From Isurus oxyrinchus (Eukaryota): a stretch of DNA of 64,000 nucleotides. Each line of letters begins with the position of its first letter. Positions within the stretch are counted from its first letter, which is position 1. Where the stretch lies: NCBI GenBank assembly GCA_026770705.1, contig JANJGN010000071.1, positions 1,488,001 to 1,552,000 on the forward strand, in the 5' to 3' direction. The position numbers and the translations under genes are program-made. Positions 1 through 61,560 of the stretch are shown here, one piece after another. The notes beneath the pieces were generated by a model, which made no database searches, was not told the DNA's origin, and was given only the letters and a program-made list of their open reading frames with translations.

Positions 1-426
1 AGCACATACATAATGACAATGACTGCTATCATAACTCCTAAAATTCCTAATTAACATGACTCCCAGTTACACTCCCTTTAAGGCAACAGACCAAAAATAG
101 ATGTTAGATTTAAAACAAAATCAGCAAGTTAACCCAATGCCCCGGACAGTGGAATTCCAAATGCATTTTCCCCAACTTCAGTTCTGTTGGAGAGCAGACT
201 TCTGCACAAACAGGGTCCTGAGGACCATGAACCAATGTAGAATGAACTTTTCCACTTTTGTGTCCAGGATTCTCTTCCATCCGGTGTGATACCTTGTGGA
301 GTTCATTGTGTGTCCTGTAGATGGTCCACACTGCAGCCACTGTGCCCCAGTGATGGAGGGGGTGGATATCGAGTCTAGTGGATCAACAAAACATCCAGAG
401 TTAAATATTGATATTTCTCTCCCCAG

Positions 427-804
427 TTGGATTGTCACAAGAGTGGAAAGGTGACACTCCACGAGAGGTGACAGCACAGGAAGGTTCGTGTGTACAGATT
501 CCATGTCATTACAGTTATCCATCAGATTTGATAAAGAAACCACAGGTCGGATTCTGGAAAATGAGAAGATACATACGGAACAAATGGTCTAAATGGTCTA
601 TAGCCTTTCACTCCAAGGATCACAGTCGCGAGTTACAACGGTTCCGCCATCGGACCCGGCTGTCTGGAGACCTGAAAGATGGCGACTGTTCCCTGATTAT
701 AAACAACATCAGACGGGAAGATGCAGGACATTATTTTTTCATGATAAAATTTGGCAATCGTCCGAGCCGTAACGTTTCCCCTGAAACCCAGCTTCACGTT
801 TCTG
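427..804 (+). CDS. Siglec/CD22/MAG-like receptor gene A, N-terminal V-set Ig exon (intact frame; essential Arg replaced by Met)
   Basis: Acceptor ttctctccccAG ends at 426 and donor GTAAGT starts at 805; phase 1/1, 126 codons. Siglec-type V motifs: W..., GSCVQIPC, GFW, RTRLSGDLKDGDCSLIINNIRREDAGHYFF. Codon 741-743 is ATG where the paralogues have AGA. Confidence 0.9.
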
Positions 805-1029
805 GTAAGTGCTGTGTTATAATTACTCAACAATTCACATCCAACACTCAATGGGAAATAATAGTGTTTGATTTGCTTGTTTTTTGGCCGTGTTAACCAG
901 CGTCACTATTTTTAATGATTTGTCTATTTCTGCTCCCAGATCCATGAGCTTATTGTGTGTGATTGAATCCACATCATAGCTGTAATGTAAACCGAGCTGA
1001 GGGGTGATGACACCTCCCCCCTGAGTGAA

Positions 1030-3860: not shown

Positions 3861-3921
3861 AAGTTGAGTCTAGTGGATCCACAAACCATCCAGAGTTAAA
3901 TATTGAGATTTGTCTCCCCAG

Positions 3922-4290
3922 CTGAACCCTCACAAGAGTGGAAAGGTGACACTCCACGAGAGGTGACAGTGCAGGAAGGTTCGTGTGTACAGATTCCATG
4001 TCATTACAGTTATCCATCGTGTCTGGAAAACCAACCGCGAGGTGGAGTCTGGTTTAATAATGAGAAACAGATTCCCTAGGATCCCATTGCCTTTCACTCC
4101 AAGGATCACAGTCACGAGTTACCACGGTTCCACCATCGGACCCGGCTGTCTGGAGACCTGAAAGATGGCGACTGTTCCCTGATTATAAACAACATCACAC
4201 GGGAAGATGAAGGACCTTATTTTTTCAGAATAGAATTTGACAATGGTCCGAGCCATAACTATTACCCTGTAACCCAGCTTCACGTTTCTG
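3922..4290 (+). pseudogene. Second Siglec-like V-set exon with in-frame stop
   Basis: AG at 3920-3921 and GTAAGT at 4291. Translates AEPSQEWKGDTPREVTVQEGSCVQIPC...NNEKQIP*DPIAF...EDEGPYFFRIEF. TAG at 4077-4079 is in frame; the Arg codon AGA (4227-4229) is retained. Confidence 0.9.
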
Positions 4291-5213
4291 GTAAGTGCTG
4301 TGTTATAATTACTCAACAATTCACATCCAACACTCAATGGGAAATAACACAAACTGTGACGTTTACATATTAACACAAAAGACAGTTTATTATAACACAC
4401 TGTCTGATTCTCAATAACCTGGTGATAGCTTCCAGTTCAGTCCTAAAACAACCTCTAATACTCACTTTAATATCAATGATTAAATGTATTGACTGTGTCC
4501 ATCAATGTTATCAGGTTATCCACTCCCATCGATCTCCCTAACCCTGTCTCGAAGTCTGACATATCGACAGAAGAAAGATTCACATTTCTATTGCACCTTT
4601 CACCATCTCAGCACGGACCAAATCACTTCACAGCCAATGAGCTGATTCCTGAATTGTAGTTACTGTTGTAATGTGAGAAACACAGCAGCCAATTTGCACA
4701 CAGCAAGCTCCCACAAATTGCAAAGTAATAAATGGCCCAGATCGCTGAGTGAATGATGGGGTAGTGCACTCCAAACTCTGGTCTGCTCCACCACCCTCAC
4801 CCACTATTATCAGTTCAAGTTTTTTGGAGTGAACATGTATTAAGCTGAGAGACAGAAACACCAAAGTAACATGTACGGACATCCTGCATTAGCCATTATA
4901 GTCCACATGTTACACAGCAAAACCCCATAAACTACAGTTTGTTTAACAACAGATCATCTGCTTTTATTGATAAAAATTCACCTCTGACATTGCAGAGCAA
5001 CTTCCTGCTGACCCCCCGACNNNNNNNNNNNNNNNNNNNNNNNNNNNNNNNNNNNNNNNNNNNNNNNNNNNNNNNNNNNNNNNNNNNNNNNNNNNNNNNN
5101 NNNNNNNNNNNNNNNNNNNNNNNNNNNNNNNNNNNNNNNNNNNNNNNNNNNNNNNNNNNNNNNNNNNNNNNNNNNNNNNNNNNNNNNNNNNNNNNNNNNN
5201 NNNNNNNNNNNNN

Positions 5214-25630: not shown

Positions 25631-26619
25631 AATATTGGACTAATCTCCAGGCGAGGTTGGCTGGATGGATTATTGACAAGGTCCATTCACCCTGTAAAGA
25701 GTTTCTCTGGTTTGAAATACCCGATCAAACATCGAGTTCTGTGTCTAAACCTTGTGTTGAAAAGACACCTTTCCAGCTCTTCACCTGCCATTAGCTTGTT
25801 GAGTCTTCACATGCTCCGTCTGTCCGTGGCCAACCCCTCTTAGCTCATCCTTTCCTTGTCGTACATCGAGCTGTTCATCCTGACGGGTTCCCTCCTTCCC
25901 AGTAACACTCCATCTCCGACATCAAACTAACTCCCAACACGTTGATGAATTGTATGGATTCCAGCGTCAGTTGGTTCTGTCTGAGGCTGTTTCTCTGATC
26001 GGGGACCGAGCTGTTCTGAATGGACATTGTGTTCAGTACTGATCCTCCGACAGTGCAGCACTCCCTCAGTGCTTACCCTCTGACAGTGCAGCACGCCCTC
26101 AGTACTGATCCTCTGACAGTGCAGCACTCCCTCACCACTCCCTCACTGGGGAGAATCTACCTGGGTTTTGAGCTGAAATCATGAGCAGGTCTTAAAACAT
26201 TCTGTATCAGAGAGAGAGAGAGTGTCTGAGAGAGAGAGAGAGACAGAGAGACTGTGTGAGAGAGAAAAAGAGATAGAGAGTGTGCATGTGTGAGGGAGAG
26301 TGTTTGTATATGAGGGAGAGAGTGTGCATGTGAGAGTGTGTGAGAGAGAGTGTGTGGGAGAGAGTGTGTGTGTGTGACAGAGAGAGTGTGTGTGTGCGAG
26401 GGAGAGAAAGAGAGAGACAGCAGAAGATCGAGATGAAGAGAAATGTTAAATGTTTGAGAGAGAGAGAATGTGCGTGTCTGAGAGAGAGAGTGTGTGTGTG
26501 TGAGAGAGAGTGTGTGCTTGACAGAAAGAGAGATTGTGTTAGTTTTAGGGAAAGTGTGTGAGTGTGTGAGAGAGTGTTTGTGTCTGAGAGAGAGAGAGAG
26601 AATGTATTTGAGGGAGGGA

Positions 26620-29600
26620 GACAGAGAGAATGTGTGTGTGAGAGAGAGAGAGAGAGCAGAAGAGTGCGATAGAGAGAGATTGTGAGTGTTAGAGAGAGAA
26701 TGTGTGTGTGAGAGAGAGAGATAGAGCAGAAGAGTGCGATAGAGAGAGATTGTGTTTGTTAGAGAATGAGTGTGTGTGTGAAAGAGAGAGAGAGAGCAGA
26801 AGAGTGTAATAGAGAGAGATTGTGAGTGTTAGAGAGAGAATGTGTGTGTGTGAGAGAGAGAGAGCAGAAGAGTGTAATAGAGAGAGATTGTGAGTGTTAG
26901 AGAGAGAATGTGTGTGTGTGTGAGAGAGAGAGATAGAGCAGAGGAGTGTGATAGAGAGAGATTGTGAGTGTTAGAGAGAGAATGTGTGTTTGTGAGAGAG
27001 AGAGAGAGAGCAGAAGAGTGCGATAGAGAGAGATTGTGAGAGTTAGAGAGAGAATGTGTGTGTGTGTGAGAGAGAGAGATAGAGCAGAGGAGTGAGATAG
27101 AGAGAGATTGTGAATGTTGGAGAGAGAATGTGTGTTTGTGTGAGAGAGAGAGAGAGCAGAAGAGTGCGATAGAGAGAGATTGTGAGTGTTAGAGAGAGAA
27201 TGTGTGTGTGTGTGAGAGAGAGATAGAGCAGAAGAGTGTGATAGAGAGAGATTGTGAGTGTTAGAGAGAGAATGTGTGTGTGTGTGAGAGAGAGATAGAG
27301 CAGAAGAGAGCGATAGAGAGAGATTGTGAGTGTTAGAGAGAGAATGTGTGTGTGTGAGAGAGAGAGAGATAGAGCAGAAGAGAGCGATAGAGAGAGATTG
27401 TGAGTGTTAGAGAGAGAATGTGTGTGTGTGAGAGAGAGATAGAGCAGAAGAGTGTGATAGAGACAGATTGTGAGTGTTAGAGAGAGAATGTGTGTGAGAG
27501 AGAGAGAGAGAGCAGAAGAGTGTGATAGAGAGAGATTGTGAGTGTTAGAGAGAGAATGTGTGTGTGAGAGAGAGAGAGATAGAGCAGAAGAGTGTGATAG
27601 AGACAGATTGTGAGTGTTAGAGAGAGAATGTGTGTGTGTGTGAGAGAGAGATAGAGCAGAAGAGTGTGATAGAGACAGATTGTGAGTGTTAGAGAGAGAA
27701 TGTGTGTGTGTGAGAGAGAGAGAGATAGAGCAGAAGAGTGTGATAGAGACAGATTGTGAGTGTTAGAGAGAGAATGTGTGTGAGAGAGAGAGAGATAGAG
27801 CAGAAGAGTGCGATAGAGAGAGATTGTGAGTGTTAGAGAGAGAATGTGTGTGTGTGTGAGAGAGAGATAGAGCAGAAGAGAGCGATAGAGAGAGATTGTG
27901 AGTGTTAGAGAGAGAATGTGTGTGTGTGAGAGAGAGAGAGATAGAGCAGAAGAGTGTGATAGAGAGAGATTGTGAGTGTTAGAGAGAGAATGTGTTTGTG
28001 AGAGAGAGAGAGATAGAGCAGAAGAGTGTGATAGAGAGAGATTGTGAGTGTTAGAGAGAGAATGTGTGTTTGTGAGAGAGAGAGAGATAGAGCAGAAGAG
28101 TGCGATAGAGAGAGTTTGTGAGTGTTAGAGAGAGAATGTGTGTGTTTGAGAGAGAGAGATAGAGCAGAAGAGTGTGATAGAGAGAGATTGTGAGTGTTAG
28201 AGAGAGAATGTGTGTGTGATAGAGAGAGAGATAGAGCACAGGAGTGTGATAGAGAGAGATTGTGAGTGTTAGAGAGAGAATGTGTGTGTGAGAGAGAGAG
28301 AGCAGAAGAGTGTGATAGAGAGAGATTGTGAGTGTTAGAGAGAGAATGTGTGTGTGAGAGAGAGAGAGATAGAGCAGAAGAGTGCGATAGAGAGAGATTG
28401 TGAGTGTTAGAGAGAGAATGTGTGTGTGTGAGAGAGATAGAGCAGAAGAGTGCGATAGAGAGAGATTGTGAGTGTTAGAGAGAGAATGTGTGTGTGTGAG
28501 AGAGATAGAGCAGAAGAGTGTGATAGAGAGAGATTGTGAGTGTTAGAGAGAGAATGTGTGTGTGTGAGAGAGAGAGAGATAGAGCAGAAGAGTGTGATAG
28601 AGATTGTGAGTGTTAGAGAGAGAATGTGTGTGAGAGAGAGAGAGAGAGAGCAGAAGAGTGTGATAGAGAGAGATTGTGAGTGTTAGAGAGAGAATGTGTG
28701 TGTGTGTGAGAGAGAGAGATAGAGCAGAAGAGTGTGATAGAGAGAGATTGTGTTTGTGAGAGAGAGAGAGAGCAGTAGAGTGCGATAGAGAGAGATTGTG
28801 AGTGTTAGAGAGAGAATGTGTGTGTGTGTGAGAGAGAGGGGCAGAAGAGTGTGATAGAGAGAGATTGTGAGTGTTAGAGAGAGAATGTGTGTGTGTGTGA
28901 GAGAGAGATAGAGCAGAAGAGTGTGATAGAGAGAGATTGTGAGTGTTAGAGAGAGAATGTGTGTGTGTGTGAGAGAGAGATAGAGCAGAAGAGTGCGATA
29001 GAGGGAGATTGTGAGTGTTAGAGAATGTGTGTGAGTGAACGAGAGATAGAGCAGAAGAGTGCGATAGAGAGAGATTGTGAGTGTTAGAGAGAGAATGTGT
29101 GTGTGTGCGAGAGAGAGATAGAGCAGAAGAGTGCGATAGAGAGAGATTGTGAGTGTTAGAGAGAGAATGTGTGTGTGAGAGAGAGAGAGAGAGCAGAAGA
29201 GTGCGATAGAGAGAGATTGTGAGTGTTAGAGAGAGAATGTGTGTGTGTGAGAGAGAGAGAGATAGAGCAGAGGAGTGTGATAGAGAGAGATTGTGTTTGT
29301 TAGAGAGAGAATGTGTGTGTGTGAGAGAGAGAGAGAGCAGAGGAGTGTGATAGAGAGAGATTGTGTTTGTTAGAGAGAGAATGTGTGTGTGTGAGAGAGA
29401 GATAGAGCAGAGGAGTGTGATAGAGAGAGATTGTGTTTGTTAGAGAGAGAATGTGGGTGTGAGAGAGAGAGATAGAGCAGAAGAGTGAGATAGAGATTGT
29501 GAGTGTTAGAGAGAGAATGTGTGTGTGTGTGAGAGAGAGAGAGAGCAGAAGAGTGCGATAGAGAGAGATTGTGTTTGTGAGAGAGAATGTGTGTGTGAGA

Positions 29601-31350
29601 GAGAGATAGAGCAGAGGAGTGTGATAGAGAGAGATTGTGAGTGTTAGAGAGAGAATGTGTGTGTGTGAGAGAGAGATAGAGCACAGGAGTGTGATAGAGA
29701 GAGATTGTGAGTGTTAGAGAGAGAATGTGTGTGTGAGAGAGAGAGAGATAGAGCAGAAGAGAGCGATAGAGAGAGATTGTGAGTGTTAGAGAGAGAATGT
29801 GTGTGTGTGAGAGAGAGATAGAGCAGAAGAGTGTGATAGAGAGAGATTGTGTTTGTGAGAGAGAGAGAGAGCAGTAGAGTGTGATAGAGAGAGATTGTGA
29901 GTGTTGGAGAGAGAATGTGTTTGTGTGAGAGAGAGAGATAGAGCAGAGGAGTGTGATAGAGAGAGATTGTGAGTGTTGGAGAGAGAATGTGTGTGTGTGA
30001 GAGAGAGATAGAGCAGAGGAGTGTGATAGAGAGAGATTGTGTTTGTTAGAGAGAGAATGTGTGTGTGAGAGAGAGAGAGAGCACAGGAGTGTGATAGAGA
30101 GAGATTGTGAGTGTTAGAGAGAGAATGTGTGTGGGAGAGAGAGATAGAGCACAGGAGTGTGATAGAGAGAGATTGTGAGTGTTAGAGAGAGAATGTGTGT
30201 GTGAGAGAGAGAGAGATAGAGCAGAAGAGTGCGATAGAGAGAGATTGTGAGTGTTAGAGAGAGGATGTGTGTGTGTGAGAGAGAGAGAGAGAGAGCAGAA
30301 GAGTGCGATAGAGAGAGATTGTGTTTGTGAGAGAGAGAGAGAGCAGTAGAGTGCGATAGAGAGAGATTGTGAGTGTTAGAGAGAGAATGTGTGTGAGAGA
30401 GAGATAGAGCAGAGGAGTGTGATAGAGAGAGATTGTGAGTGTTGGAGAGAGAATGTGTTTGTGTGAGAGAGAGAGATAGAGCAGAGGAGTGTGATAGAGA
30501 GAGATTGTGAGTGTTGGAGAGAGAATGTGTGTGTGTGAGAGAGAGAGATAGAGCAGAGGAGTGTGATAGAGAGAGATTGTGAGTGTTAGAGAGAGAATGT
30601 GTGTTTGTGAGAGAGAGAGAGAGAGCAGAAGAGTGCGATAGAGAGAGATTGTGTTTGTGAGAGAGAGAGAGAGAGAGCAGTAGAGTGCGATAGAGAGAGA
30701 TTGTGTTTGTTAGAGAGAGAAGGTGTGTGTGTGAGAGACAGAGAGATAGAGCAGAAGAGTGTGAAAGAGAGAGATTGTGAGTGTTAGAGAGAGAATGTGT
30801 GTGTTTGAGAGAGAGAGAGATAGAGCAGAAGAGTGTGATAGAGAGAGATTGTGAGTGTTAGAGAGAATGTGTGAGAGAGAGAGATAGAGCAGAAGAGTGT
30901 GATAGAGAGAGATTGTGAGGGTTAGAGAGAGAATGTGTGTGTGAGAGAGAGAGATAGAGCAGAAGAGTGTGATAGTGAGAGATTGTGAGTGTTAGAGAGA
31001 GAATGTGTGTGTGTGAGAGAGAGAGATAGAGCAGAAGAGAGCGATAGAGAGAGATTGTGAGTGTTAGAGAGAGAATGTGTGTGTGTGAGAGAGAGAGATA
31101 GAGCAGAAGAGTGTGATAGAGAGGGATTGTGAGTGTTAGAGAGAGAATGTGAGTGTGAGAGAGAGAGAGAGAGAGAGAGCAGAAGAGTGCGATAGATAGA
31201 GATTGTGAGTGTTGGAGAGAGAATGTGTGTGTGAGAGAGAGAGAGACAGAGCAGAAGAGTGTGATCGAGAGAGATTGTGAGTGTTAGAGAGAGAATGTGT
31301 GTGTGTGTGAGAGAGAGATAGAGCAGAAGAGTGCGATAGATAGATATTGT
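26620..31350. repeat. About 4.7-kb satellite of 60-66-bp units built from microsatellite modules (agagcagaagagtgtgatagagagagattgtgagtgttagagagagaatg(tg)n(ag)n)
   Basis: Dozens of tandem units directly visible. Confidence 0.97.
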
Positions 31351-31617
31351 GACGACTAAACTCACTGAGAGAAAAAGCTGGACACCCAGCACAGGGAGTG
31401 AGGGAACAATGAATTTTTGCCGTGTTTGGTGAATCGGTTTGCGATGTCCCTTCTCAATCTCTCCTTCCTTGTCTTGACATTAGTTTATTCCCTGGTGCTG
31501 TTTAACTCCCTGAAAGGTGCCATTTAACCACAAGTTGTTGTTTGAGGAAGAAACGCTGGGGACAATTTATGAAAAAGTCTCTGTCTTTATCATTTCCATT
31601 TAGATGAGGAACTGAAG

Positions 31618-31663
31618 ATGGGAGAGGTCGGTCTGATATTGATCTTCATCAGCTTGCTGCAAG
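31618..31663 (+). CDS. Gene B leader/signal-peptide exon (MGEVGLILIFISLLQG)
   Basis: Acceptor at 31602-31603, ATG at 31618, CAAG|GTAC donor in phase 1, matching the V exon at 32484; same 'SLLQG' ending as the gene D leader. Confidence 0.8.
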
Positions 31664-31994
31664 GTACAAATTCATTACTGATCGGAACTCTGGGAATTGG
31701 ATTCTTTCCTGGAGTGAGGAAGTGAACATTTAATTTTAGAGAACAGGATTAGTGATCACACAGAGAGTGAGCGAATAGCGAGTCAGAGAATATAGCAAAA
31801 GCAAAAGCCTCATACGGACTCGAAATACCAACTCTGTTTCTCTCTCCACAGATGCTGTCAGACCTGCTGAGTTTTTCCAGCATTTTCTGTTTGTGCATCA
31901 GAGAGCTTGTTTCAATAGGAATGACAGTGCATTTATATAGCACCTTTAATGCAGTAAAACATCCTTATTGCTTCACAGGATTCCCCCACAAGGG

Positions 31995-32450
31995 GTAACA
32001 TCCCCTCAGCATCCACCCTGTCAAACCCCCCACCACCTCAGAATCTTATATGTTTCAATAAGATCACCTCTCATTCTTCTAAACTCCAATGGATACAGGG
32101 CCCAACCTGCTCAACATTTCCTCACAGGACAAACCCTCTTCATCCCAGGAATCAGCCCAGTGAACCTCCTCTGAATTGCCTCCAATGCAGAGTCTATCCC
32201 TCCCTAAGTAAGGAGACCAGAACTGTACACACTGCTCCTGATACAATCTCACCAACGCCCTGTGCAGTTGTAGCAAGACTCCCCTCCTTTTATACTCCAT
32301 CCCTTTGCAATAAAGGCCAACATTCCACTTGCCTTCCTCATTCCGTGCTGTTCCTGAATGCTGACTTTCTGTGATTCATGTACAAGGACACCCAGGTCCC
32401 TCTGTACCGCATTCTGCTGCCTCTCTCCATTGAAGTAATATTCTGCTTTT
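31995..32450 (-). mobile_element. CR1-like LINE fragment
   Basis: Highly similar to about 3350-3790. Confidence 0.85.
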
Positions 32451-32483: not shown

Positions 32484-32785
32484 GAGTGACGTCAGAGGGA
32501 TGGTCTATGAAGGCGCTGCCTCAGAGGGCCATCAGCAGCTCTTGTGTGGTTATTCCGTGTAGCTTTGACTTTCCTTCCCACTCTTACACAGCACTGCACG
32601 GAGCTTGGTATAAATATTGGTATAGATGGAAATATACCATCACATACACCAAAGATCCCAATTATGGGGTGGCCACATTCGTGGGACGTGCTAAAATAAT
32701 TGGCGACTTGGAAGGGAAGAATTGTTTGGTGAGGATTGACAGTCTCAGAGCTGAAGACAGTGACGTGTATTACACCCAATTCTAA
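32484..32785 (+). pseudogene. Gene B MAG/sialoadhesin/CD22-like V-set exon, truncated in strand F by a Gypsy fragment
   Basis: cctttcAG acceptor; GVTSEGWSM...SSCVVIPCSFDFP...GAWYK...FVGRAKIIGDLEGKNCLVRIDSLRAEDSDVYY, then retroelement sequence and a stop; no G strand or donor site. Confidence 0.85.
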
Positions 32786-36464: not shown

Positions 36465-37060
36465 CCTTTCTATCTCACGGATTAGAATATAAGGGGGCAG
36501 AGGTCATGCTTCAGTCTACATAAAGCCCTGGCTAGACCACACCTGGAGTCACTGTGAGACATTCTGGGCCCCACACCTTAGGAAGGATATATTGACCTCG
36601 GAGGGAGAGCAGTGTCAGTTTACCAGAATGAGACTGGGACTCCAAGGGTTAAATCACAAGGAGAGATTAAACACAAACTCGGCTTGTATTCCCTGGAAGT
36701 TAGAATGTTAAGCAGGAGATTTGATGAAAGTTCGCATGATAATAAGGGGAACAGATCGGGGGCGATAAAGAGAAACCATTTCCCCTGGTTGGGGGGAGTC
36801 TGGGACTCAGGGTCAGAGCCTAAAAAGGAATTAAATTAGGAAGTACAAAGGGTGGGAGAAATTTGGAACTCTCTTCCCCAAACAGGAACTGATGCACGAT
36901 CAAGTTGTTCATTTTAAACCTGTGAGACTGATAGATTTTTGTTATCCAAAGGTATTAAAGGAGATGGGACAAAGCCATATGGGGCTAGTTTGCAGATCAG
37001 CCATGATCTCATTGAATGGTGGAGCAGGCTCGAGGGGCCAAATGGCCTCCTCCTACCCTC
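36465..37060 (+). mobile_element. CR1-like LINE 3' fragment
   Basis: GLEYK, RPHLE and WAPHLRKDI remnants; tail gatcagccatgatctcattgaatggtggagcaggctcgagggg. Confidence 0.75.
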
Positions 37061-37620
37061 ATGTAATAGAAACTTACCTGTCAGAAGCCAGTTTATGTTG
37101 ATGTGAGTCTGAGTCGATGACTGAACCCAGTTGGTAACTTGTTCCATACAAAGCAAGAACGTTCATGCCCTTCAATGTTCCTGGATAAACCATGAACAAA
37201 GCTGGTGACAGACAGTCTCCACATGGTAAACAGTTAACCCCTAAACCTCAGCGTAAATCAGTTCCCCCTCGAGGCCCCTTGTCCAAAATAAAAGCAACGC
37301 ACACAATTTGTAAAATAGTAAGTGTAGCAATGAGAGGAGTAAGGGGTTAGAGGGCATGCGGTTCACCTGATTTGCCGACATAAGAACCAGCCCCTATGTT
37401 TTTGCTATGTTGTGTTGCGTCAATATGAACACATATCTGCACAAGGTGAAGGGCGTTGCGGAGGGACTGATAGTTCTCGGTGCCAGACAGTCAATGTCCC
37501 AGTGACCTTACTGCTGGTCCCAGGCCAGTGGGACAGGGAACATCGACACTGCAATATCCAGAAATGGGTGTGATACCACACAGCTACCCACCCGCGGCTG
37601 TCCCCTTCAAGTGTTTCAGG

Positions 37621-37628
37621 TATAAGAG
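37621..37628 (+). promoter_or_regulatory. Candidate TATA box of the hepcidin-like gene
   Basis: TATAAGAG 77 nt upstream of the ATG, consistent with a short 5' UTR. Confidence 0.55.
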
Positions 37629-37697
37629 CAGGAAGCTCCTCTAGTTACAAACCAAAGCATCAAAGCAGAGCCAGAAGATCAGAAGAGACAGGCAGAG

Positions 37698-37790
37698 ATG
37701 GGAAGCTCCCAGATGAAATGGCGACTTGTCTTGTTCACTCTGACTTTGCTGCTCTCCCTGCAGCTGAGTCACTTCTTCTCCTTGTCGAGG
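37698..37790 (+). CDS. HAMP: Hepcidin-like gene exon 1 (signal peptide MGSSQMKWRLVLFTLTLLLSLQLSHFFSLSR)
   Basis: Strong Kozak context (gagATGG), hydrophobic signal peptide, 93 nt, phase-0 donor AGG|GTAAGC. Confidence 0.85.
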
Positions 37791-37989
37791 GTAAGCTAAG
37801 AGATGTCCCTCTGGGTGAGGTGTTTCTTGCACATGACTCTACGTCTACCACCCAGATAGACTGGTCTCTTCCGCAGTTTGATATTATTATGTTCGTGCCT
37901 TTAATATTGTCGCCCTCTATGAATTTAACATCATTTCCTTCTGTCGTTTCCCCTGAAATTCTCATTCTTGTTTTCAATCCCTCCTCAGC

Positions 37990-38850
37990 CACTCCCTATC
38001 TCTGTAACCTCCACCAGGCCTTACAACCCTCCCTATCTCTGTAACCTCCTCCAGCCCCTACACCCCTCCCTATCTCTGTAACCTCCTCCAGCCGCTACAA
38101 CCCTCCCTATATCTGTAACCTCCTCCAGCCCCTACAACAATCCCTATCTCTGTAACTTCCTCCAGCCCCTACAACTGTCCCTATCTCCGTAACCTCCTCC
38201 AGCCCCTACAACCCTCCCTATCTCTGAAACCTCCTCCAGCCCCTATAAACCTCCCTATCTCTGTAACCTCCTCCAGCCCCTACAACCCTACCTATCTCTG
38301 TAACCTCCCCCAGGCCCCACAACCCTCATGATCACTGTAACCTCCTCTAGACCCTACAACCCTCCCTATCTCTGTAACCTGCTCCAGACCCTACAACCCT
38401 CCCTATCTCTGTAACCTCCTCCAGGCCCTACAACCCTCCCTATCTCTGTAACCTCCTCCAGGCCCCACGACCCTCAGAATCACTGTAACCTCCTCCAGCC
38501 CCTACAATGCTCATGAACTCTATAACGTCCTCTCCACACTATAACTCTCCCTATCTCTGTAACCTACTATGGCCCCTACAACAGTATCTATTTTGGTAAC
38601 CTCCTCCAGCCTCTACAACCCTCCCTACCTCTGTAACCTCCTCCAGCCCCCACAACCCCCCCCATCTCTTTAACCTCCTACAGCCCCTACTCACCTCCCT
38701 ATCTCTGTAACCTCCTACAGCCCCTACAACCTTCCCTATCTCTGTCACCTCCTACAGCCTCTAGAACCCTCCCTATCTCTGTTACCTCCTACAGCCTCTA
38801 CAACCCTCCCTATCTCTGTAACCTCCTCCAGCCGGAACAACCCTACCTAA
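37990..38850. repeat. 37-bp minisatellite in hepcidin intron 1
   Basis: 37-nt period measured directly (38041 to 38078). Confidence 0.92.
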
Positions 38851-38859
38851 ATCTCTGGT

Positions 38860-39500
38860 CTGAGTCTCACTCCAGGGAATTCAGTCCCATAACGTCGGTC
38901 AACACTCCGTGCTGAGGGAGTGCTGGACTGTCAGAGGGTCAGTAGTGTGGAAGTGTTGCACTATTGGAGGGACAGTACTGAGTGAGTGCTATACTGTCGG
39001 AGGTCAGTACTGAGGAAGTGCTGCATTGTTACAGGGTCAGTACTGTGGAAGTGTTGCACTGTCGGAGGGTCAGTACTGAGGTAGCGCTGCACTGACGGAG
39101 GGACAATACTGTGGGAGTGCAGCACTATCGAAGGGTTAGTACTGAGGGAGTGCTGCAGTGTCAAAGGGTTAGTACTGAGGGAGCACAACAATGTTGAATG
39201 AGACATTAAACCGAGTCCCCCGTCTGCCCTCTCGGGCGGGTGTGAAAGATCCCACAGCCACTATTTGGAGGAAGAGCAGGGGGTGTTCTCCCCGGTGTCC
39301 TGGGACCAATATTTATCCCTCACCCAACATCACCAAAAGCAGATGATCTAGGCCATGATCACATTGCTATTTGTGGGATCTTGCTGTGCACAAATCAGCT
39401 GCCACATTTCCTACAGTGTGAGTGCACTTCAAAAACATCCTTCAGTGGCTGTGAAATGCTTTGGGATGTGGTGAAAGGCGTTAGAGAAATGCAAGTCTGT
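38860..39500 (+). mobile_element. DeuSINE (SacSINE1-like) with an internally amplified 30-bp unit
   Basis: The minisatellite runs directly into tgagacattaaaccgag...aaagatcccac...atttatccctca...gtgaaaggcg..agaaatgcaagt, the Deu-domain body and tail. Confidence 0.75.
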
Positions 39501-39597
39501 CCTCCTCCCCCTCTCTCTCCTGTACCTCTCTCTCTCTCTCTCCCTCTCCCTCAATCCTCCTCTCACTTTCTCCCTGATAAATTCTTTCTTTTTGCAG

Positions 39598-39654
39598 GTT
39601 GACACTGCTTTAGGTTCTTCGACGATTGAGAAATCTGTGGATTCCCCGGACACG
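39598..39654 (+). CDS. HAMP: Hepcidin-like gene exon 2 (pro-region VDTALGSSTIEKSVDSPDT)
   Basis: Long polypyrimidine tract plus ttgcAG acceptor, ACG|GTAGGT donor, 57 nt; only phase 0 is open. Confidence 0.8.
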
Positions 39655-40926
39655 GTAGGTGGAAATTCATTCCTTATTTTAAGGTTTCTCCCTGCTCGTT
39701 TCTTCCACAGAAAGTTTTCTGATTTCAAGCTGATTTCAGTGGCAGTCTGTCTCGGTTATACTCAGGAGGCATGTTTGAAATCGAGCCCCCCCACCCCTCA
39801 ATTTTTTTGCAAAGCTGGGAAGAGGCAATTCCAAGGAAGTGAACATATCCCCACAGGAATTTTAAATGTAACCCACGCCGGGAATAGTGAGAGGGAGACT
39901 GATCCAGCCTGGGAGTGGGTTAAAGAGAGGCTGGGAGTCGAGAGTCGGAGAGAGGGATGGAATGGGGGAGGGAGGGATTGGAAGAGAGAGACACAGAGTG
40001 GGACGGGGAGGGGTGAAAGGGAAAGAACATAGGTGGGAGAGAGTGACAGAGGGAGAAATTAAAGAGATGCAGAGTGAGGGAAAGTGAAAAGGGAAGAGAG
40101 ATTGTCCAAGAGAGAGAAATTACCAGGAAAGGGAGAGTTACAGAGCGAGCGAAAGTTACAAAAATAGTGTGAGAGAGAGGGAGAGATACAGAGTGGGAGA
40201 AGGAGACAGGGGAGAGAGAGGGAGAGAGACAGGAAAAGGGAGAGAGGAGAGAAAGATTGGGAGAGAGGGCAATTGAGCGGAAGAGTAGGAGAGAGAGAGA
40301 CAGGGAGAGGAGGAGTGGAAGAGAGGAAGAGAGAGAGAGATATGGAGCAGGAGAACACCTCCTCCGGTCCCGATGTTCCTCCAAAATCTCTGACATTATT
40401 GCATCTCCCAGGTCCCCCTGATTCCCATCGCTCCACCATTGGTGGCCGTGCCTTCAGCTGCCTGGGGCCCTGAGCTCCGGAATACCCTCCCTTAACCTCT
40501 CTGCCTCTCTCTCTCTCTCTCCTTTAAGACGCTCCTTAAAAACTGACATCTTTGACCAAGCTTTTGGTCACCTATCCCTAATATCTCCATATGTGACTCA
40601 GTGTTAGACTTCTCTCTGATTTACGTTCCGGTAATGTGGGCTGGGACATTTTGCAATGTCAGAGGTGCTGTGTAAATGCAAGTTGTGAGTGTTATGTGGA
40701 AGGGAGACCCCAGGCGGCAGTCAGTGCCAGAGACTGGAGTCATTGTGTGCAGACCGTATCTAATCTCTCCGAATGCACAATCGGTTTGACTGTCAGCCAA
40801 AGCATTTTTGATATTTGATCCTTCTACCTGTTTATAACCAGGCCTACATCAAACACCGAGAGGCTGGTTAATCAACAGACACCTTAGAGGATCGAGTGAA
40901 AGACAAAGAGGACTTGCATTTCTCTA

Positions 40927-41058
40927 TAAAAACAAAGAAAACTGCGGATGCTGGAAATCCAAAACAAAAACAGAATTACCTGAAAAAACTCAGCAGGTCT
41001 GGCAGCATCGGCGGAGAAGAAAAGAGTTGACGTTTCGAGTCCTCAGAAGGGTCATGAG
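40927..41058. mobile_element. Penelope-like terminal repeat fragment with a collapsed palindrome centre
   Basis: Same sequence as 5214-5315, followed by gaagggtcatgag. Confidence 0.65.
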
Positions 41059-41319
41059 CACCTTCCAACACATCAGGACATCCCAAACTGTTTCGCAGAC
41101 AATCAAGTGCTTTTTTTCTTTCATGTGAGGTCACTGATGTACTGTGGGAAAAGAATCAGCCATTGGCGCACAGTAAGATCCCACAGACAGCAGCATGATA
41201 ATGACCAGCGCGCTCCCAGTACTTGCACTGCAAGTGTCAGTTCAGGGTGTCTGCTCAATTCTCTGCAACTCTCAGCTCTGAGTTAAAAGGACCACCAGAC
41301 ATAATTGAGAAATTACTGA

Positions 41320-41930
41320 GCTGTCGGAGGGTCAGTACCAGCGGGGGGGCAGGACAGTCGGAGGGTCAGTACTGAGGGGGTGCTGCATTGTCAGACAGTC
41401 AGTCTTGGAGTGCTGCATTGTCAGAGGGTCAGTACCGGCGGGGGACTGCACAGTCGGAGGGTCAGTACTGAGGGGGTGCTGCATTGTCAGACGGTCAGTA
41501 CTGAGGGAGTGCTGCACAGTCGGAGGGTCAGTACTGAGGGGGTGCTGCACTGTTGAAGGCGCTGTCTTTCAGATGAGATGTTAAACTGAGACAACATCTG
41601 CCCTCTCAGATGGATGTAGAGGATTCCATGGCCACAATTTAAATGAAGTGCGTCAGGAGTTGGGGGTATGTGTGGAGGGGGTGGTGGGGGGTGGATGGGA
41701 TGCAGTTATGTCTGCTTTCCTGGGGCAAACATTTATCCCTCAACTGACATTGGTAATAAACTGAAAATCGGGGCCATTATCACATTTCTGTTTGTGGGAT
41801 CTTGCTGTGCGTGAATTGCCTGCTGCGTTTCCTACATTACAGCGGTGAGCTCACTTCAGAAAAAGTCCTTCCTTCAGCTGTGGAACACTTTGGGCCATCC
41901 TGAGGAGGGGAAAGGCGCTATAGAAATGCG
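41320..41930 (+). mobile_element. DeuSINE with amplified 30-bp unit (hepcidin intron 2)
   Basis: Array followed by gctgtctttcagatgagatgttaaac... and the tail aaaggcgctatagaaatgc. Confidence 0.75.
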
Positions 41931-42018
41931 CCATCCTCCTTCCAATGACGCGCCTGATTGAAATGATGCCTTCTTTCTTTCCGGAATGTTCTCACCTATT
42001 GTCCTCCTGCTTTTCCAG

Positions 42019-42135
42019 GGCTCCTTGCTGCAGCGCCAGAAGAGAATGGGCAGACAGCAGCTCTGCAGATTCTGCTGTAACTGCTGTAATTGGAGAGAAC
42101 CAAATGAGACTTGTGGTCTCTGCTGTAGATATTAG
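42019..42135 (+). CDS. HAMP: Hepcidin-like gene exon 3: GSLLQRQKR / MGRQQLCRFCCNCCNWREPNETCGLCCRY*
   Basis: cttttccAG acceptor, phase 0; RxKR furin site; hepcidin 8-Cys signature C-x2-CC-x-CC-xn-CG-x-CC; TAG at 42133-42135. Confidence 0.93.
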   Translation, partial: GSLLQRQKRMGRQQLCRFCCNCCNWREPNETCGLCCRY

Positions 42136-42982
42136 ACCCTGGCCTCATTCACGCAAGGTCATCCTGCACCATGCCACAGCCTCTCCCCTCCTTATCTACT
42201 GCTTAGCAATCTATTTCACACAGGCCCTGTTCATTAATTCCAACTGAAACTTTACCTGCGTTCTACAGCAGGGAAAGAAGCCATTCGGCCCATCTGTTCC
42301 ATGCTGGAGTTTCTGCTCCACACGAGTCTCCGCCCACCCCTTCTCCATCTCACCCCATCACCATATCCTTCTATTCATTTCTCCCTCATGTGTTTATCCA
42401 GCTTCCCCTTAAATACATCGACTCTATTCACCTCACGTGACTGTGTTTGTGTCTGTCTTTATGAGCGTGTGTGTGTGTGTGTGTGTGTGACTGTCAATAT
42501 GTGTGTGTCAATGTGAATGTGTGTGATTGTGTCAGCGTGTGTGTGTGTATGTGTGACTGTCAGTGCGTGTCAATGTGAATGTGTGTGATTGTGTCAGCGT
42601 GTGTGTGTGTGTGTGCGTGTGTGTGTGTGTGTAACTGTGTCAGTGTGTGTCAATGTGAATGAGTGAGTGTGTCAGTGTGTCTGTGTGGGTGTGTGTGACT
42701 GTGTCAGTGTGTGTCAATGTGAATGAGTGAGTGTGTCAGTGTGTCTGTGTGGGTGTGGGTGTGTGAGTGTGCAAGTGAATGTGTGAGGAATCTTATGACT
42801 AAGTCATTTGAATGGATGTTACTGGGGTTAATGATAGTTAAAATTCAGAGTGATGTAAAGCGGGCTCCTGATTTTGCTGCTTTATGCTCCCAGGCACAGA
42901 TTGACCCCGACAATGTGTTCATGATTCACCATCATCTTGTCGGGACTTTAATTGTAAAGATTATGATTTGTGAAAAAAAATG

Positions 42983-58983: not shown

Positions 58984-59876
58984 GTAATATCATCGTCAGC
59001 TCAGATAGATTTATGGTTAATAGTCTTCGTAAAAGATCATTCTTATTGAGCTCTGATTGGGAAGTGATTCAGCAGTGAGCCAGTGTACAAACTCACACCA
59101 AGTCCCATTCACCCATCATCCCTGTGCTCACTGATATACACTGACTCCCTGTCTGACAGCAGAATTGGAGGAGTGCAGAGATCACAGAGGGTTGTAGGTT
59201 TGGAGGAGGTTACAGAGACAGGGAGTGGAGCGGAGTGATGGAGGGATTGGAAATCAAGTGTCAAAATAATCACATCGAGGTGTTGCTGGACTGGGAGCCA
59301 GTGTAGGTCAGCGAGTGACTTGTGGGGTCGGGGTGGAGGTTTGGGGAGGTGAAAGTTTGAGTAGAAAATTGGACACAAAATTCAGGGGATGAAGTCTATC
59401 TTGTGGCTAGGACTCTGACAGCAATGGCCTGAAATTAGTGTCTTTTGCTGATTTTAGTCAGAATTTCCCATGAAGACAACACAGCAGCTCCTAGAATAGA
59501 CAGGCTGTTCAGTGTCACACTTCCTGTCCATTCTCACCTTGCTAGATACTTCAATAAGGGAGCAAGATAACTGAAAGAGAGAAGGAAGGTAAAGCTGTCC
59601 ATGTGTAAAGGTGTCAATATTCAGTTTGTATATTTGTCTTTCTCTCGACACATGCAGAGCTCAGGCTAGAGGCACTTTGTTAGTGTGTTTCACAGTGTCT
59701 GCTGGAGTAGGGTCAGTGCTGAGCTTGGGGACAAGTCAGTCTACAATGCTGCATCGGAATCAACAATACAACAATATGGGGTTTGGTTCAGAAATAATCC
59801 CCTAGACAATGAGGATCCAAAGAGATTCCTTAGACAATGAGGATCCAGGGTTAAATATTGATATTTCTCTCCCCAG

Positions 59877-60245
59877 TTGGACTGTCACAAGAGTGGAAAG
59901 GTGACACTCCACGAGAGGTGACAGCGCAGGAAGGTTCGTGTGTACAGATGCGGTGTCACTACAGTTATCCAGCATATTTTGAAAACAAACGACAAGTCGG
60001 AATCTGGTTAAATAATGAGAAATACAAATTCTGGCCTCCCATTGCCTTTCACTCCAAGGATCACAGTCACGAGTTACCACGGTTCCACCATCGGACCCGG
60101 CTGTCTGGAGACCTGAAAGATGGCGACTGTTCCCTGATTATAAACAACATCAGACGGGAAGATGCAGGACCTTATTTTTTCAGAATAGAATTTGACAATG
60201 GTCCGAGCCATAACTATTACCCTGTAACCCAGCTTCAGGTTTCTG
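59877..60245 (+). CDS. Gene D Siglec-like V-set exon with the essential Arg (EDAGPYFFRIEF)
   Basis: 369 nt, phase 1/1, open frame; AGA at 60182-60184. Confidence 0.92.
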
Positions 60246-61560
60246 GTAAGTGCTGTGTTATAATTACTCAACAATTCACATTCAACACTCAATGGGAAAT
60301 AACACAAACTGTGATGTTTACACATTAACACAAAACACAGTTTATTTTCACAGACCGTCTGATTCTCAATAACCTGGTGATCGCTTCCAGTTCAGTCCTT
60401 AAGCAACCTCTAATACTCACTTTAATATCAATGATTAAATGTATTGACTGTGTCCATCAATGTTATCAGGTTATCCACTCCCATCAGTCTACCTAATGCT
60501 TTTTAAATGTCTAACAATTTGACAAAAGAAGGATGTGCATTCCTATAGCGCCTTACACCACCTCAGCAAACTTCAAATCATTTCACAGACAATGAAGAAA
60601 TTCTTGAAGTATAGTCACTGTCTAACGTGGCAGTGAGTTTGTGCACAGGAAGATCCCATAGAGAGCAATGGGATCAGTGACCCAGATCTCTGAGAGAATG
60701 ATGAGCCAGGGTTCCATGAGCTGTGGACTGCTCCATCACCCACACCCCAGTGTTGGCAATTCAAGGGTCTGGGAGTGAAAGTGTATTCAGCTCAGTGACA
60801 CATTCCCCACCAAGTTTGAAAATAGGAAAGTTGCTGCTGATTGTTGTGACCTCTCAGTTCCCATCTCATCCTTGGAAACCTGCTTTCAAAATACAAAAGC
60901 AATTCTCGCATTTCCATAGCGCCTTTCACCACCTCAGGACGATCCTAAATCAATTCACAGCCAATGAAGTGATTCTTGAAGCACACATTCTCCCCACTCT
61001 CTGGGTAAAGAAGTTTCTCCTGAATTCCCCATTGGATTTATTAGTGAGGATCTTATATTGTCAGCCTCTGGTTTTGTTCATTGTGAGGAGTGGAAACACT
61101 CTCTCCATGTCTACTCGATCAAAACCTTTCATTACTTCAAAGGTCAAATGATGTCACCCCTCAACCTTCTCTGTTCACGGGAACAGAGACCCAGCCTGTT
61201 CATCCTCTCCTGATAGGTAAAGCCTCACATTGCTGAGATCATCCTTGTGAAGCTTTTTACCACCCTCTCCAGTGTCTCTATATCCTTTTCCAAATGCTGA
61301 GTCTGCTCTCCCCGAGCTGTGAGCTGTTCCTCCACCCTCACCCAGTCTGGTCAAATCAAGGGTCACTGAGTGAGAGTGTATTAATCTGAGTGACAGAGAT
61401 TCAACAAGTGTAAAAATAGACAATTCTTTAATGATCATTGTAACCTCTCAGTTCTGATATCATCCTTGTAAAAGTGCTTTCTCTTGTGGGACTGTGGTTT
61501 CTATTTGAACTGATGCTTCACGTTATATTTCTCTAAAAGGATCCATTCTCTGTCTGTTAG

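What the first reader, a model, noticed from the sequence alone, without database searches (positions are those of the whole stretch)
42046..42135. Atypical mature hepcidin: doubled hairpin loop with an N-glycosylation sequon and no ferroportin-binding N-terminus
Seen: the 29-aa mature peptide has 8 residues (NWREPNET, 42088-42111) between Cys5 and Cys6 and contains an N-E-T sequon. Its N-terminus is MGRQQL; the net side-chain charge is about +2. Established: human hepcidin-25 has 4 residues there (HRSK). Iron-regulatory hepcidins have an N-terminal DTHFPI/QSHLSL-type segment with His3, needed for ferroportin down-regulation; teleost HAMP2-type antimicrobial paralogues lack it. Inference: this may be an antimicrobial-type or lineage-specific hepcidin, possibly glycosylated, or one co-evolved with a divergent shark ferroportin. 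It bears on whether the ancestral role was immunity or iron control.
Basis: partly seen in the sequence, partly recalled or inferred. Interest (0 to 1): 0.78.

Follow-up and report, generated by a model that had tools for sequence, protein, structure and literature searches.

The report
Diverged copy of shark hepcidin gene
This is a real, spliced and strongly transcribed shark gene for a hepcidin-type peptide; its long loop is normal for shark hepcidins, but it has lost the histidine start that marks the iron hormone, so it is most likely a side copy with another, untested role.

Summary
Window 42019-42135 (+) is the last exon of a three-exon hepcidin gene (Pfam Hepcidin 31.6 bits, cut-off 27). 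Both introns appear as GT..AG joints in RNA-like contigs of an independent run. After R-Q-K-R it encodes a 29-residue, 8-cysteine peptide with the 8-residue loop, an N-E-T sequon and net charge +2.

The 8-residue loop is not atypical for sharks. 4 of 5 annotated shark precursors that I retrieved (basking shark and two catsharks) encode 29-residue peptides with the same cysteine spacing and an 8-residue loop. All four start M-S-H-L-S, the iron-hormone pattern with His3.

What is special to this copy is the changed N-terminus, the lower charge (+2 against +5) and the sequon, which 0 of 5 relatives carry in the loop. Against the basking-shark gene the prepro part is 52/59 identical and the mature peptide 12/29. 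One contig of the same RNA-like run continues with the His3 type.

It is therefore a fast-diverged paralogue and not the animal's only hepcidin. Function and glycosylation are untested. The scan has already noted many near-identical copies elsewhere in this genome.

The parts
37621..37626 (+). TATAAG box, 77 bases before the start codon
   Evidence: Pattern scan. X5 depth rises from 12,677 (bin 37500-37663) to 295,260 (bin 37664-37827). The transcription start itself was not mapped.
37698..37790 (+). Exon 1 coding part, 31 residues: start codon and hydrophobic signal-peptide-like segment
   Evidence: Sequence. The donor GT follows. Joint 37789>39597, GT..AG (cut +1), is seen in 10 X5 contigs. 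29 of 31 residues are identical to the basking-shark precursor P0003.
37791..39597 (+). Intron 1, with a 37-base tandem array (37992-38849, 23 copies) and 33-base repeats
   Evidence: Joint; Tandem Repeats Finder.
39598..39654 (+). Exon 2, 19 residues of propeptide
   Evidence: Sequence and joints on both sides in X5. 16 of 19 residues are identical to P0003.
39655..42018 (+). Intron 2. Minor transcripts include a cryptic exon of about 155 bases (about 40842-40996) inside a repeat.
   Evidence: Main joint 39653>42018, GT..AG (cut +1), in 9 X5 contigs. Minor joints 39653>40841 and 40993>42016, one contig each.
42019..42135 (+). Exon 3 coding part: end of the propeptide, convertase site, mature peptide, stop
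   Evidence: Translation. Pfam Hepcidin 31.6 bits, E 2e-7. The acceptor AG lies at 42017-42018.
42034..42045 (+). R-Q-K-R, presumed proprotein-convertase cleavage site
   Evidence: Sequence. The shark relatives have R-E-K-R or R-Q-R-R at the same place, directly before M-S-H. Cleavage is inferred.
42046..42132 (+). Predicted 29-residue mature peptide with 8 cysteines
   Evidence: The cysteine positions are the same as in P0003 and P0004.
42088..42111 (+). 8-residue hairpin loop between the fifth and sixth cysteines
   Evidence: It shows as a 4-residue insertion relative to human and bass hepcidin, and has the same length as in P0003, P0004, P0007 and P0008.
42103..42111 (+). N-E-T sequon, Asn 9 residues before the C-terminus
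   Evidence: The sequon is absent from the loop of 5 of 5 shark relatives. Occupancy is unknown.
42136..42435 (+). 3' untranslated region (end approximate), with AATACA at 42412
   Evidence: X5 depth stays at 6e5 to 8e5 up to 42400. Hexamer scan. The end was not mapped. The bin 42256-42400 also holds a repeat (X1 depth 6116).

Best explanation
This is one copy of a shark-lineage paralogue of hepcidin.

Shown:
- It is a three-exon gene that sits among Siglec-like V-set exons.
- Spliced RNA-like contigs match it at very high depth.
- Its 88-codon precursor model has prepro exons almost identical to the annotated basking-shark hepcidin precursor.
- Its mature part has the shark-typical 29-residue, 8-cysteine, long-loop layout.

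Inferred:
- The precursor is secreted and cut after R-Q-K-R by a furin-type convertase.
- It folds into the four-disulfide hepcidin hairpin, with the 8-residue loop at the tip.
- The gene arose by duplication of the His3-type shark hepcidin and then changed fast in the mature peptide only: positions 2-5, 8-9 and 12, and the loop from Lys-rich to W-R-E-P-N-E-T.
- The first nine residues carry hepcidin's effect on ferroportin, and His3 and the hydrophobic residue 4 are gone. I therefore judge it a poor ferroportin agonist.
- The conserved His3 copy keeps iron control. This copy serves another role, most likely in host defence.
- The N-E-T sequon could be glycosylated only by the post-translocational STT3B route, so it is probably partly occupied or empty.
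For: Family membership and gene structure:
- Pfam Hepcidin scores above the cut-off.
- GT..AG joints are seen at both introns, in 10 and 9 contigs, and the exon-to-intron depth ratio is about 100 to 1000 in X5.

Relatives:
- Exon 1 retrieves Cetorhinus maximus XP_078389754.1 (P0003, carrying PF06446), 2 of 2 candidates.
- P0003 as query retrieves catshark hepcidins, 5 hits among 12 candidates.
- Window against P0003: prepro 52/59 identical, mature 12/29 of which 8 are Cys (Fisher p 8e-6).
- P0003 against catshark P0004 shows the reverse pattern: prepro 38/59, mature 26/29.
- Cysteine spacing and loop length are the same in P0003, P0004, P0007 and P0008.

The other type in the same run: one X5 contig shares the window's sequence up to 42048 and continues with S-H-L-S-I-C-M-Y-C-C by hand translation.

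Same mature code across laid contigs: no variant rows fall inside 42046-42135.

From papers:
- The first nine residues reproduce hepcidin's effect, and the N-terminus inserts into the ferroportin cavity (passage of bioRxiv 10.1101/2020.03.16.993006).
- In sea bass only Hamp1 (start Q-S-H-L-S-L) lowers ferroportin, not Hamp2 (PMC5665920, title, start of the abstract and passages).

Context: V-set / Ig_CD22 exons at 408-893, 3903-4346 and 59858-60301.
Against: - No function was tested.
- The copy keeps six residues before Cys7, Leu6, Phe9 and two residues after the last Cys, so some ferroportin binding is not excluded.
- Its charge (+2) is lower than that of the His3 shark peptides (+5). That does not favour a classical cationic antimicrobial role, although sea bass Hamp2 as printed in PMC5665920 has only 2 Arg.
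- RNA cannot be assigned to this copy. At 42263 the window has C, while 519,898.7 of 545,744.5 depth in X5 has T. The exon 2/3 joint in the window's form has depth 2,474.9 against 13,927.5 for a form with one changed base.
- The His3 evidence in this organism is one contig and 30 printed letters.
- X5 is labelled RNA only as a guess. Its RNA nature rests on the joints and the depth ratio.
Confidence: 0.62

Rival explanations
1. It is still an iron-regulatory ligand. The long loop and the new N-terminus co-evolved with a shark ferroportin, possibly the second ferroportin gene of cartilaginous fish.
For: N-terminal length, Leu6, Cys7, Phe9 and the C-terminal spacing are kept. In the docking described in the ferroportin preprint the disulfide-rich part faces outward, so a longer loop need not clash. 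His3 shark peptides carry the same long loop. A review states that some cartilaginous fish have a second ferroportin gene with another residue at the Cys326 position (PMC8235187, passage).
Against: His3 and hydrophobic residue 4 are lost. A His3 type, conserved at 26/29 between basking shark and catshark, is available for that role, and a His3 contig appears in the same run. No GGCGCC or TTCNNNGAA motif lies in the 1.2 kb upstream. That last point is weak, because the motifs are recalled from mammalian promoters.
Confidence: 0.15
2. This copy is a redundant or decaying member of an amplified array with no role of its own. The RNA comes from sister copies.
For: Most RNA depth carries T at 42263 where the window has C, and the deeper exon 2/3 joint differs by one base from the window. 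Earlier notes of the scan describe sister copies with an irregular splice site or a missing base (not tested here).
Against: The frame is open, both introns have GT..AG, all 8 cysteines and the convertase site are kept, and a TATA box is present. Contigs with the window's own junction exist (9 contigs), and some depth with C at 42263 remains (about 25,800 of 545,744.5).
Confidence: 0.15
3. The loop insertion or the whole exon is an assembly artefact.
For: None of the 32 listed pieces spans 42042-42131. The listed contigs break at the borders of the mature-peptide code.
Against: Exon-3 bins in X5 (another study and sample) have depth 2.7e5 to 6.4e5 with no difference row in 42046-42135. An 8-residue loop with the same cysteine spacing exists in three other shark species. 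Contig breaks at those borders are what a word graph gives when copies share flanks and differ inside.
Confidence: 0.02

Closest known systems
Shark long-loop hepcidin with His3: Cetorhinus maximus XP_078389754.1 (named 'uncharacterized protein LOC144671611 isoform X2'), Scyliorhinus canicula XP_038670190.1 ('hepcidin-2-like'), S. torazame XP_072325013.1 ('hepcidin-1')
   Same: 88-residue precursor and the same three-part layout. Prepro 52/59 identical to the basking-shark protein. A 29-residue mature peptide with cysteines at 7, 10, 11, 13, 14, 23, 26 and 27. An 8-residue loop that starts with N and ends with T.
   Different: Mature peptide only 12/29 identical. It starts M-G-R-Q-Q-L instead of M-S-H-L-S-V/I. 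The loop is W-R-E-P-N-E instead of Lys-rich. Net charge is +2 instead of +5. It has an N-E-T sequon that none of them has.
Teleost Hamp2-type hepcidin (sea bass Hamp2; hybrid striped bass hepcidin, PDB 1S6W)
   Same: A side copy beside a His3-type hormone. The core C-R-F-C-C-N-C-C is identical, the end is C-G-x-C-C-R-aromatic, and the charge is low. In sea bass the Hamp2 type does not regulate ferroportin (PMC5665920).
   Different: The loop has 5 residues there and 8 here. The nearest relatives of the window's gene are shark His3 hepcidins, so the likeness to Hamp2 is best read as parallel evolution and not orthology (inference). No antimicrobial data exist for the shark peptide.
Human hepcidin-25 (PDB 1M4F, 2KEF, 3H0T, 4QAE, 6WBV)
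   Same: Eight cysteines in the same order, the first Cys at position 7, Phe9, and two residues after the last Cys.
   Different: The human loop has 4 residues. The human start D-T-H-F-P-I has His3 and Phe4, which are absent here.
Short-loop catshark hepcidin, S. canicula XP_038669797.1 ('hepcidin-2-like')
   Same: A second hepcidin type in a shark, with a changed N-terminus (M-T-N-H-S-I).
   Different: 25 residues, a 4-residue loop, and a different kind of divergence. This shows that sharks have diversified hepcidin more than once.

Membership tests
Hepcidin family (Pfam PF06446) | Profile score at or above Pfam's gathering cut-off | tested here: met
   31.6 bits against 27, E 2e-7, for the 38-residue exon. 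The 29-mer alone scores 24.9 bits, below the cut-off.
Hepcidin family (Pfam PF06446) | Eight cysteines as C-x2-C-C-x-C-C-loop-C-x2-C-C | tested here: met
   Cys at 7, 10, 11, 13, 14, 23, 26 and 27. The columns are invariant in alignment A1.
Hepcidin family (Pfam PF06446) | Three-exon gene with the mature peptide in the last exon, spliced in RNA | tested here: met
   GT..AG joints 37789>39597 (10 contigs) and 39653>42018 (9 contigs) in X5.
Hepcidin family (Pfam PF06446) | Signal peptide and an R-x-K/R-R site directly before the mature peptide | tested here: met
   A hydrophobic exon 1 and R-Q-K-R are present in the sequence. Cleavage itself is not testable with these tools.
Hepcidin family (Pfam PF06446) | Full-length likeness to annotated hepcidin precursors | tested here: met
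   Exons 1, 2 and the pro-part of exon 3 are 29/31, 16/19 and 7/9 identical to P0003, which carries PF06446. The exons were compared one by one and never joined.
Hepcidin family (Pfam PF06446) | Position beside MAG/CD22-type Siglec genes, as for HAMP in mammals (the mammalian synteny is recalled) | tested here: inconclusive
   V-set / Ig_CD22 exons lie at 408-893, 3903-4346 and 59858-60301. Orthology of these genes to MAG or CD22 was not tested.
Iron-regulatory (type 1) hepcidin | N-terminus x-S/T-H-L/F-x-I/L/V-C with His at position 3 | tested here: not met
   M-G-R-Q-Q-L-C here. Compare M-S-H-L-S-V/I-C in sharks, Q-S-H-L-S-L-C in sea bass Hamp1 and D-T-H-F-P-I-C in man.
Iron-regulatory (type 1) hepcidin | Six residues before the first Cys, hydrophobic residue 6, aromatic residue 9, two residues after the last Cys | tested here: met
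   Leu6, Cys7, Phe9 and C-C-R-Y at the end.
Iron-regulatory (type 1) hepcidin | Causes internalisation and degradation of ferroportin | not testable with these tools
   Needs a cell assay with shark SLC40A1.
Iron-regulatory (type 1) hepcidin | BMP-responsive (GGCGCC) and STAT (TTCNNNGAA) elements near the promoter (motifs recalled from mammalian HAMP) | tested here: not met
   0 matches of either motif in 36500-37697 on both strands. This is weak, because shark elements may differ.
Teleost Hamp2-type antimicrobial hepcidin | Common descent with teleost hamp2 | tested here: inconclusive
   The core C-R-F-C-C-N-C-C equals bass hepcidin, but the prepro region is 52/59 identical to a shark His3 hepcidin. 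Independent origin is the simpler reading. No tree was built.
Teleost Hamp2-type antimicrobial hepcidin | Coexists with a His3-type gene in the same animal | tested here: inconclusive
   One X5 contig continues with the His3 type. The gene itself was not seen.
Teleost Hamp2-type antimicrobial hepcidin | Direct antimicrobial activity | not testable with these tools
   Needs MIC assays. The net charge of +2 is lower than the +5 of the His3 shark peptides.
N-glycosylated secreted peptide | Sequon N-x-S/T with x not Pro | tested here: met
   N20-E21-T22. The expectation by chance is 8.1%.
N-glycosylated secreted peptide | Sequon conserved in relatives | tested here: not met
   0 of 5 retrieved shark precursors have a sequon in the loop (for P0003 to P0005; by eye for P0007 and P0008).
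N-glycosylated secreted peptide | Glycan present on the peptide | not testable with these tools
   Needs mass spectrometry with and without PNGase F. The site lies 9 residues from the C-terminus and next to Cys. Sites in the last 50-55 residues depend on STT3B, which prefers NXT (PMC3613688). Cys-proximal sites need MagT1 (PMC4137057, listing only).

The most novel reading that the evidence does not exclude
A shark related to the basking shark has amplified a fast-evolving, possibly N-glycosylated offshoot of its iron hormone to many copies and expresses it at very high levels. This offshoot has a target of its own. It might be a ligand or blocker of the second, Cys326-less ferroportin that some cartilaginous fish carry, or a decoy that tunes the action of the His3 hormone. 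That would be a two-ligand, two-receptor iron system that arose independently of the teleost Hamp1/Hamp2 split.
Probability: 0.1. Interest if true: 0.7.

Novelty: new member of a known kind. Interest (0 to 1): 0.38.

Why it matters
Two points follow for hepcidin biology.

First, an 8-residue hairpin loop goes together with the conserved His3 N-terminus in at least three shark species. Loop length is therefore not what separates hormone-type from side-copy hepcidins, and ferroportin binding probably tolerates a long loop.

Second, sharks seem to have split hepcidin into a conserved type and a fast-changing type on their own, in parallel with teleost fish. The same signature is present: a conserved prepro part and a diverged mature peptide.

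That makes the question of iron control against defence testable in a second, independent lineage. It does not settle the ancestral role of hepcidin.

I found no paper on cartilaginous-fish hepcidin sequences in the searchable library.

Tried and rejected
Searches that gave nothing useful:
- Searches used a frame shifted by one base and found nothing. They were corrected.
- The word search with the exon-3 frame found no candidate.
- The full HMMER search of 1.84 billion representatives with the 38-residue exon gave one hit, P0001. This is a 577-residue repetitive protein without a hepcidin cysteine pattern. A 38-residue query cannot reach E 0.001 for true but diverged relatives in a library of that size, so this blank says nothing about absence.
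- The ESM Atlas gave only a 0.76 hit to a plant hypothetical protein.
- A regular-expression scan for classical Ig motifs printed nothing. tblastn with the V-set frame worked instead.
- Paper search was badly designed, because hepcidin was not forced among the terms. It adds only that 2 of its 25 listed papers hold the word.
- PMC3225996 (the minihepcidin paper) is not held. What I say of Phe4 and Phe9 beyond the 'first nine residues' passage is recalled.

Ideas considered and rejected:
- The loop as an assembly error (see the rival explanations).
- Orthology with teleost hamp2.
- Copy number from depth. Single X1 contigs over non-repeat parts have word depth 1100 to 2400 in a run of 4474 million letters, but the tool states that depth is no copy number and the library type is unknown. 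I report it as unexplained only.

The supplement of the nurse-shark plasma proteome paper (PMC9207270) may hold the detected hepcidin peptides and could bear on processing and glycosylation.

Full report
**What is in the sequence**

The + strand frame at 42019-42135 follows an AG acceptor. It reads a short propeptide end, then R-Q-K-R, then a 29-residue peptide with eight cysteines, then TAG. All coordinates in the finding are right:
- mature peptide 42046-42132
- loop of 8 residues at 42088-42111
- sequon N20-E21-T22 at 42103-42111
- four Arg and two Glu, hence net +2

My first Pfam and PDB calls used a frame shifted by one base and found nothing. In the right frame the exon matches Pfam Hepcidin with 31.6 bits against a cut-off of 27, E 2e-7. 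The 29-mer alone scores 24.9 bits. It is the only complete hepcidin cysteine motif in the six frames of the window. No second copy of any of the three exons lies in the window.

**Gene model and transcription**

Upstream lie a TATAAG box (37621), an exon of 31 codons that starts with ATG and is hydrophobic (37698-37790, donor GT), and an exon of 19 codons (39598-39654, AG and GT on its sides).

I laid contigs of four public runs on 37500-42400. Run X5 comes from another study and sample than the best DNA-like run X1, and its RNA label is only a guess. It shows:
- joint 37789>39597 (GT..AG) in 10 contigs
- joint 39653>42018 (GT..AG) in 9 contigs
- depths of 1e5 to 8e5 in the exon bins, against about 4e2 to 1e3 in non-repeat intron bins

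That pattern is what spliced RNA gives. One contig of run X17 (organism B) also carries the exon 2/3 joint.

No substitution or indel row falls inside 42046-42135 in any of the four runs. The caveat is that only 32 of more than 103,000 pieces are listed and none of them spans the loop. The listed pieces stop at 42041 or 42045 and resume at 42132. I read those breaks as branch points between gene copies that share flanks and differ inside. That is an inference.

The RNA cannot be assigned to this copy:
- At 42263 the window has C, while 519,898.7 of 545,744.5 depth in X5 has T.
- The deeper exon 2/3 joint (13,927.5 against 2,474.9) differs from the window by one base, at the last codon of exon 2.

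**A His3 type in the same run**

One X5 contig lies on the window up to 42048, the first codon of the mature peptide, and then runs on with 30 printed letters. By hand I translate these as S-H-L-S-I-C-M-Y-C-C (table 7). With the preceding Met this is the x-S-H-L-S-I-C pattern of iron-type hepcidins. By my hand count against the window:
- the first seven codons that follow the shared Met, all seven non-cysteine codons of that stretch, are changed, every one with a change of amino acid
- the three cysteine codons are letter-identical

This is a single contig, so the evidence is thin.

**Relatives**

The word search with the exon-3 frame found no candidate. The HMMER search of 1.84 billion representatives returned only a repetitive 577-residue protein that is not a hepcidin.

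The exon-1 frame did find relatives: two isoforms of Cetorhinus maximus LOC144671611, 2 of 2 candidates. One of them, P0003 (XP_078389754.1), carries PF06446. Using P0003 as query gave 5 hits among 12 candidates. The cluster look-up added two more proteins:
- Scyliorhinus canicula XP_038670190.1 and XP_038669797.1, both named 'hepcidin-2-like'
- S. torazame XP_072325013.1 ('hepcidin-1') and GCB65323.1

Four of these five precursors (P0003, P0004, P0007, P0008) encode a 29-residue peptide with these features:
- cysteines at exactly the window's positions
- an 8-residue loop, N-K/R-K-G-T/S-K-K-T
- the start M-S-H-L-S-V/I
- net charge +5

The fifth (P0005) has 25 residues, a 4-residue loop and the start M-T-N-H-S-I.

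A profile of the shark sequences aligns to human hepcidin-25 (1M4F and four further entries) with E 0.01. The N-terminus is in the same register and there is a 4-residue gap in the loop. The long loop is therefore a shark trait that goes together with His3. It is not a mark of this copy.

**What is special to this copy**

Compared exon by exon with the basking-shark precursor, the prepro part is 52/59 identical (29/31, 16/19, 7/9). The mature peptide is 12/29 identical, of which 8 are cysteines (Fisher p 8e-6). Between basking shark and catshark the pattern is the reverse: prepro 38/59, mature 26/29.

The His3 peptide is thus strongly conserved across shark orders. The window's gene looks like a recent duplicate of it that changed fast in the mature part alone:
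- S-H-L-S became G-R-Q-Q
- V-Y became R-F
- G12 became N
- the Lys-rich loop became W-R-E-P-N-E
- the charge fell from +5 to +2

The N-E-T sequon arose with that change. 0 of 5 relatives have a sequon in the loop. A sequon occurs in 8.1% of shuffles of the peptide with the cysteines fixed.

**How it most likely works**

Shown: a real three-exon hepcidin-family gene with matching spliced RNA.

Inferred: secretion, convertase cleavage after R-Q-K-R, and the four-disulfide hairpin. The shark relatives have a basic site at the same place. The overlapping R-M-G-R could give a 26-mer.

For ferroportin, the passages I read say three things:
- The first nine residues reproduce the hormone's effect.
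- The N-terminus enters the cavity while the disulfide-rich part faces outward (bioRxiv 10.1101/2020.03.16.993006).
- The C-terminal carboxylate is essential (PMC9882908).

This copy keeps the length, Leu6, Cys7, Phe9 and the C-terminal spacing, and it loses His3 and the hydrophobic residue 4. In sea bass only the Q-S-H-L-S-L type lowers ferroportin (PMC5665920, title, start of the abstract and passages). I therefore rate a weakened or lost ferroportin action as more likely than not, with another role for this copy.

Host defence is the usual guess, but the drop in charge does not favour it.

Glycosylation is possible only after translocation. The Asn lies 9 residues from the C-terminus and beside a cysteine.
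- Sites in the last 50-55 residues depend on STT3B, which prefers NXT. A test site 14 residues from the end was used less well (PMC3613688, abstract and passages).
- Cysteine-proximal sites need MagT1 (PMC4137057, search listing only).

**Context**

Siglec-like V-set exons (Pfam V-set 48.4 bits, Ig_CD22 39 bits) lie at 408-893. Copies at 72.8-76.3% identity lie at 3903-4346 and 59858-60301, and a weak one at 32528-32773, all on the + strand. That HAMP lies beside MAG and CD22 in mammals is recalled and was not tested.

The 1.2 kb upstream holds no GGCGCC and no TTCNNNGAA. This is a weak negative, because the motifs are recalled.

**Earlier notes of this scan**

The index lists 179 notes with the word hepcidin in this genome. 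They include follow-ups on near-identical long-loop copies 937 kb, 308 kb and 155 kb before this window, 551 kb and 770 kb after it, and on other pieces. So this is a repeat finding on other DNA of the same genome.

- One note said that the long loop is normal for sharks (s1-869909), and one that the copy lost the histidine start and the positive charge of other shark hepcidins (s1-871155). I tested both and they hold.
- The notes on many copies I could not test. The high word depth of X1 contigs (1100 to 2400) fits them, but by the tool's own warning it is no copy number.
- No note holds the M-S-H-L motif, so the His3 gene may not yet have been seen in this genome.

**Literature**

Searches for hepcidin with shark (208 papers, 25 listed), cartilaginous fish (47, 20 listed), elasmobranch (16, 15 listed), chondrichthy- (12, all listed), and Chondrichthyes plus ferroportin (0) showed no title on a cartilaginous-fish hepcidin. 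The loop motif occurs in no held paper.

The passages I read:
- Hepcidin is among the nurse-shark plasma proteins that had no whale-shark orthologue (PMC9207270).
- There is a general sentence on fish peptides (PMC6795676).
- There is a reference-list entry only (PMC3832898).

Subscription journals and supplements were not searchable, so 'not in print' holds for this library only.

**Verdict**

- The thing is a new member of a known kind: a diverged paralogue of the shark long-loop hepcidin.
- Its function and its glycosylation are open.

Noticed in passing
window 39655-42018 (about 40842-40996): Minor X5 joints 39653>40841 and 40993>42016 (GT..AG, one contig each, depths 844 and 510) imply a cryptic exon of about 155 bases inside intron 2. 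It lies in a very high-depth repeat and would break the frame.
   Followed up: no
window 37500-42400: Single contigs of the DNA-like run X1 over non-repeat parts of the gene have word depth 1100 to 2400 in a run of 4474 million letters. This fits many gene copies, but the tool warns that depth is no copy number.
   Followed up: partly
window 37992-38849, 38912-39184, 41321-41553: A 37-base tandem array of 23 copies lies in intron 1. A 33-base repeat family occurs in both introns. Both reach depths of 1e5 to 5e6 in all four runs, so they are genome-wide repeats.
   Followed up: no
window 408-893, 3903-4346, 59858-60301, 32528-32773: Siglec/CD22-like V-set exons flank the hepcidin gene, all on the + strand. 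The first reads Y-F-F-M where I recall an Arg in sialic-acid-binding Siglecs.
   Followed up: partly
P0002 and P0006 (Cetorhinus maximus LOC144671611 isoforms X3 and X1): In the basking-shark annotation, hepcidin exons 1-2 are also spliced onto unrelated 3' exons. The resulting products of 87 and 131 residues have no hepcidin domain.
   Followed up: no
window 26000-32000: A stretch with extreme GC skew (0.63 to 0.90) gives many weak Leu/Ser/Thr-rich matches on the minus strand. It is a long low-complexity repeat.
   Followed up: no
P0005 (Scyliorhinus canicula XP_038669797.1): The short-loop catshark hepcidin has its own sequon, N3-H-S, at the N-terminus, and His at position 4 instead of 3.
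   Followed up: no
window 42442-42771: A TG-rich microsatellite with 62-64-base higher-order units starts right after the presumed poly-A signal AATACA at 42412.
   Followed up: no
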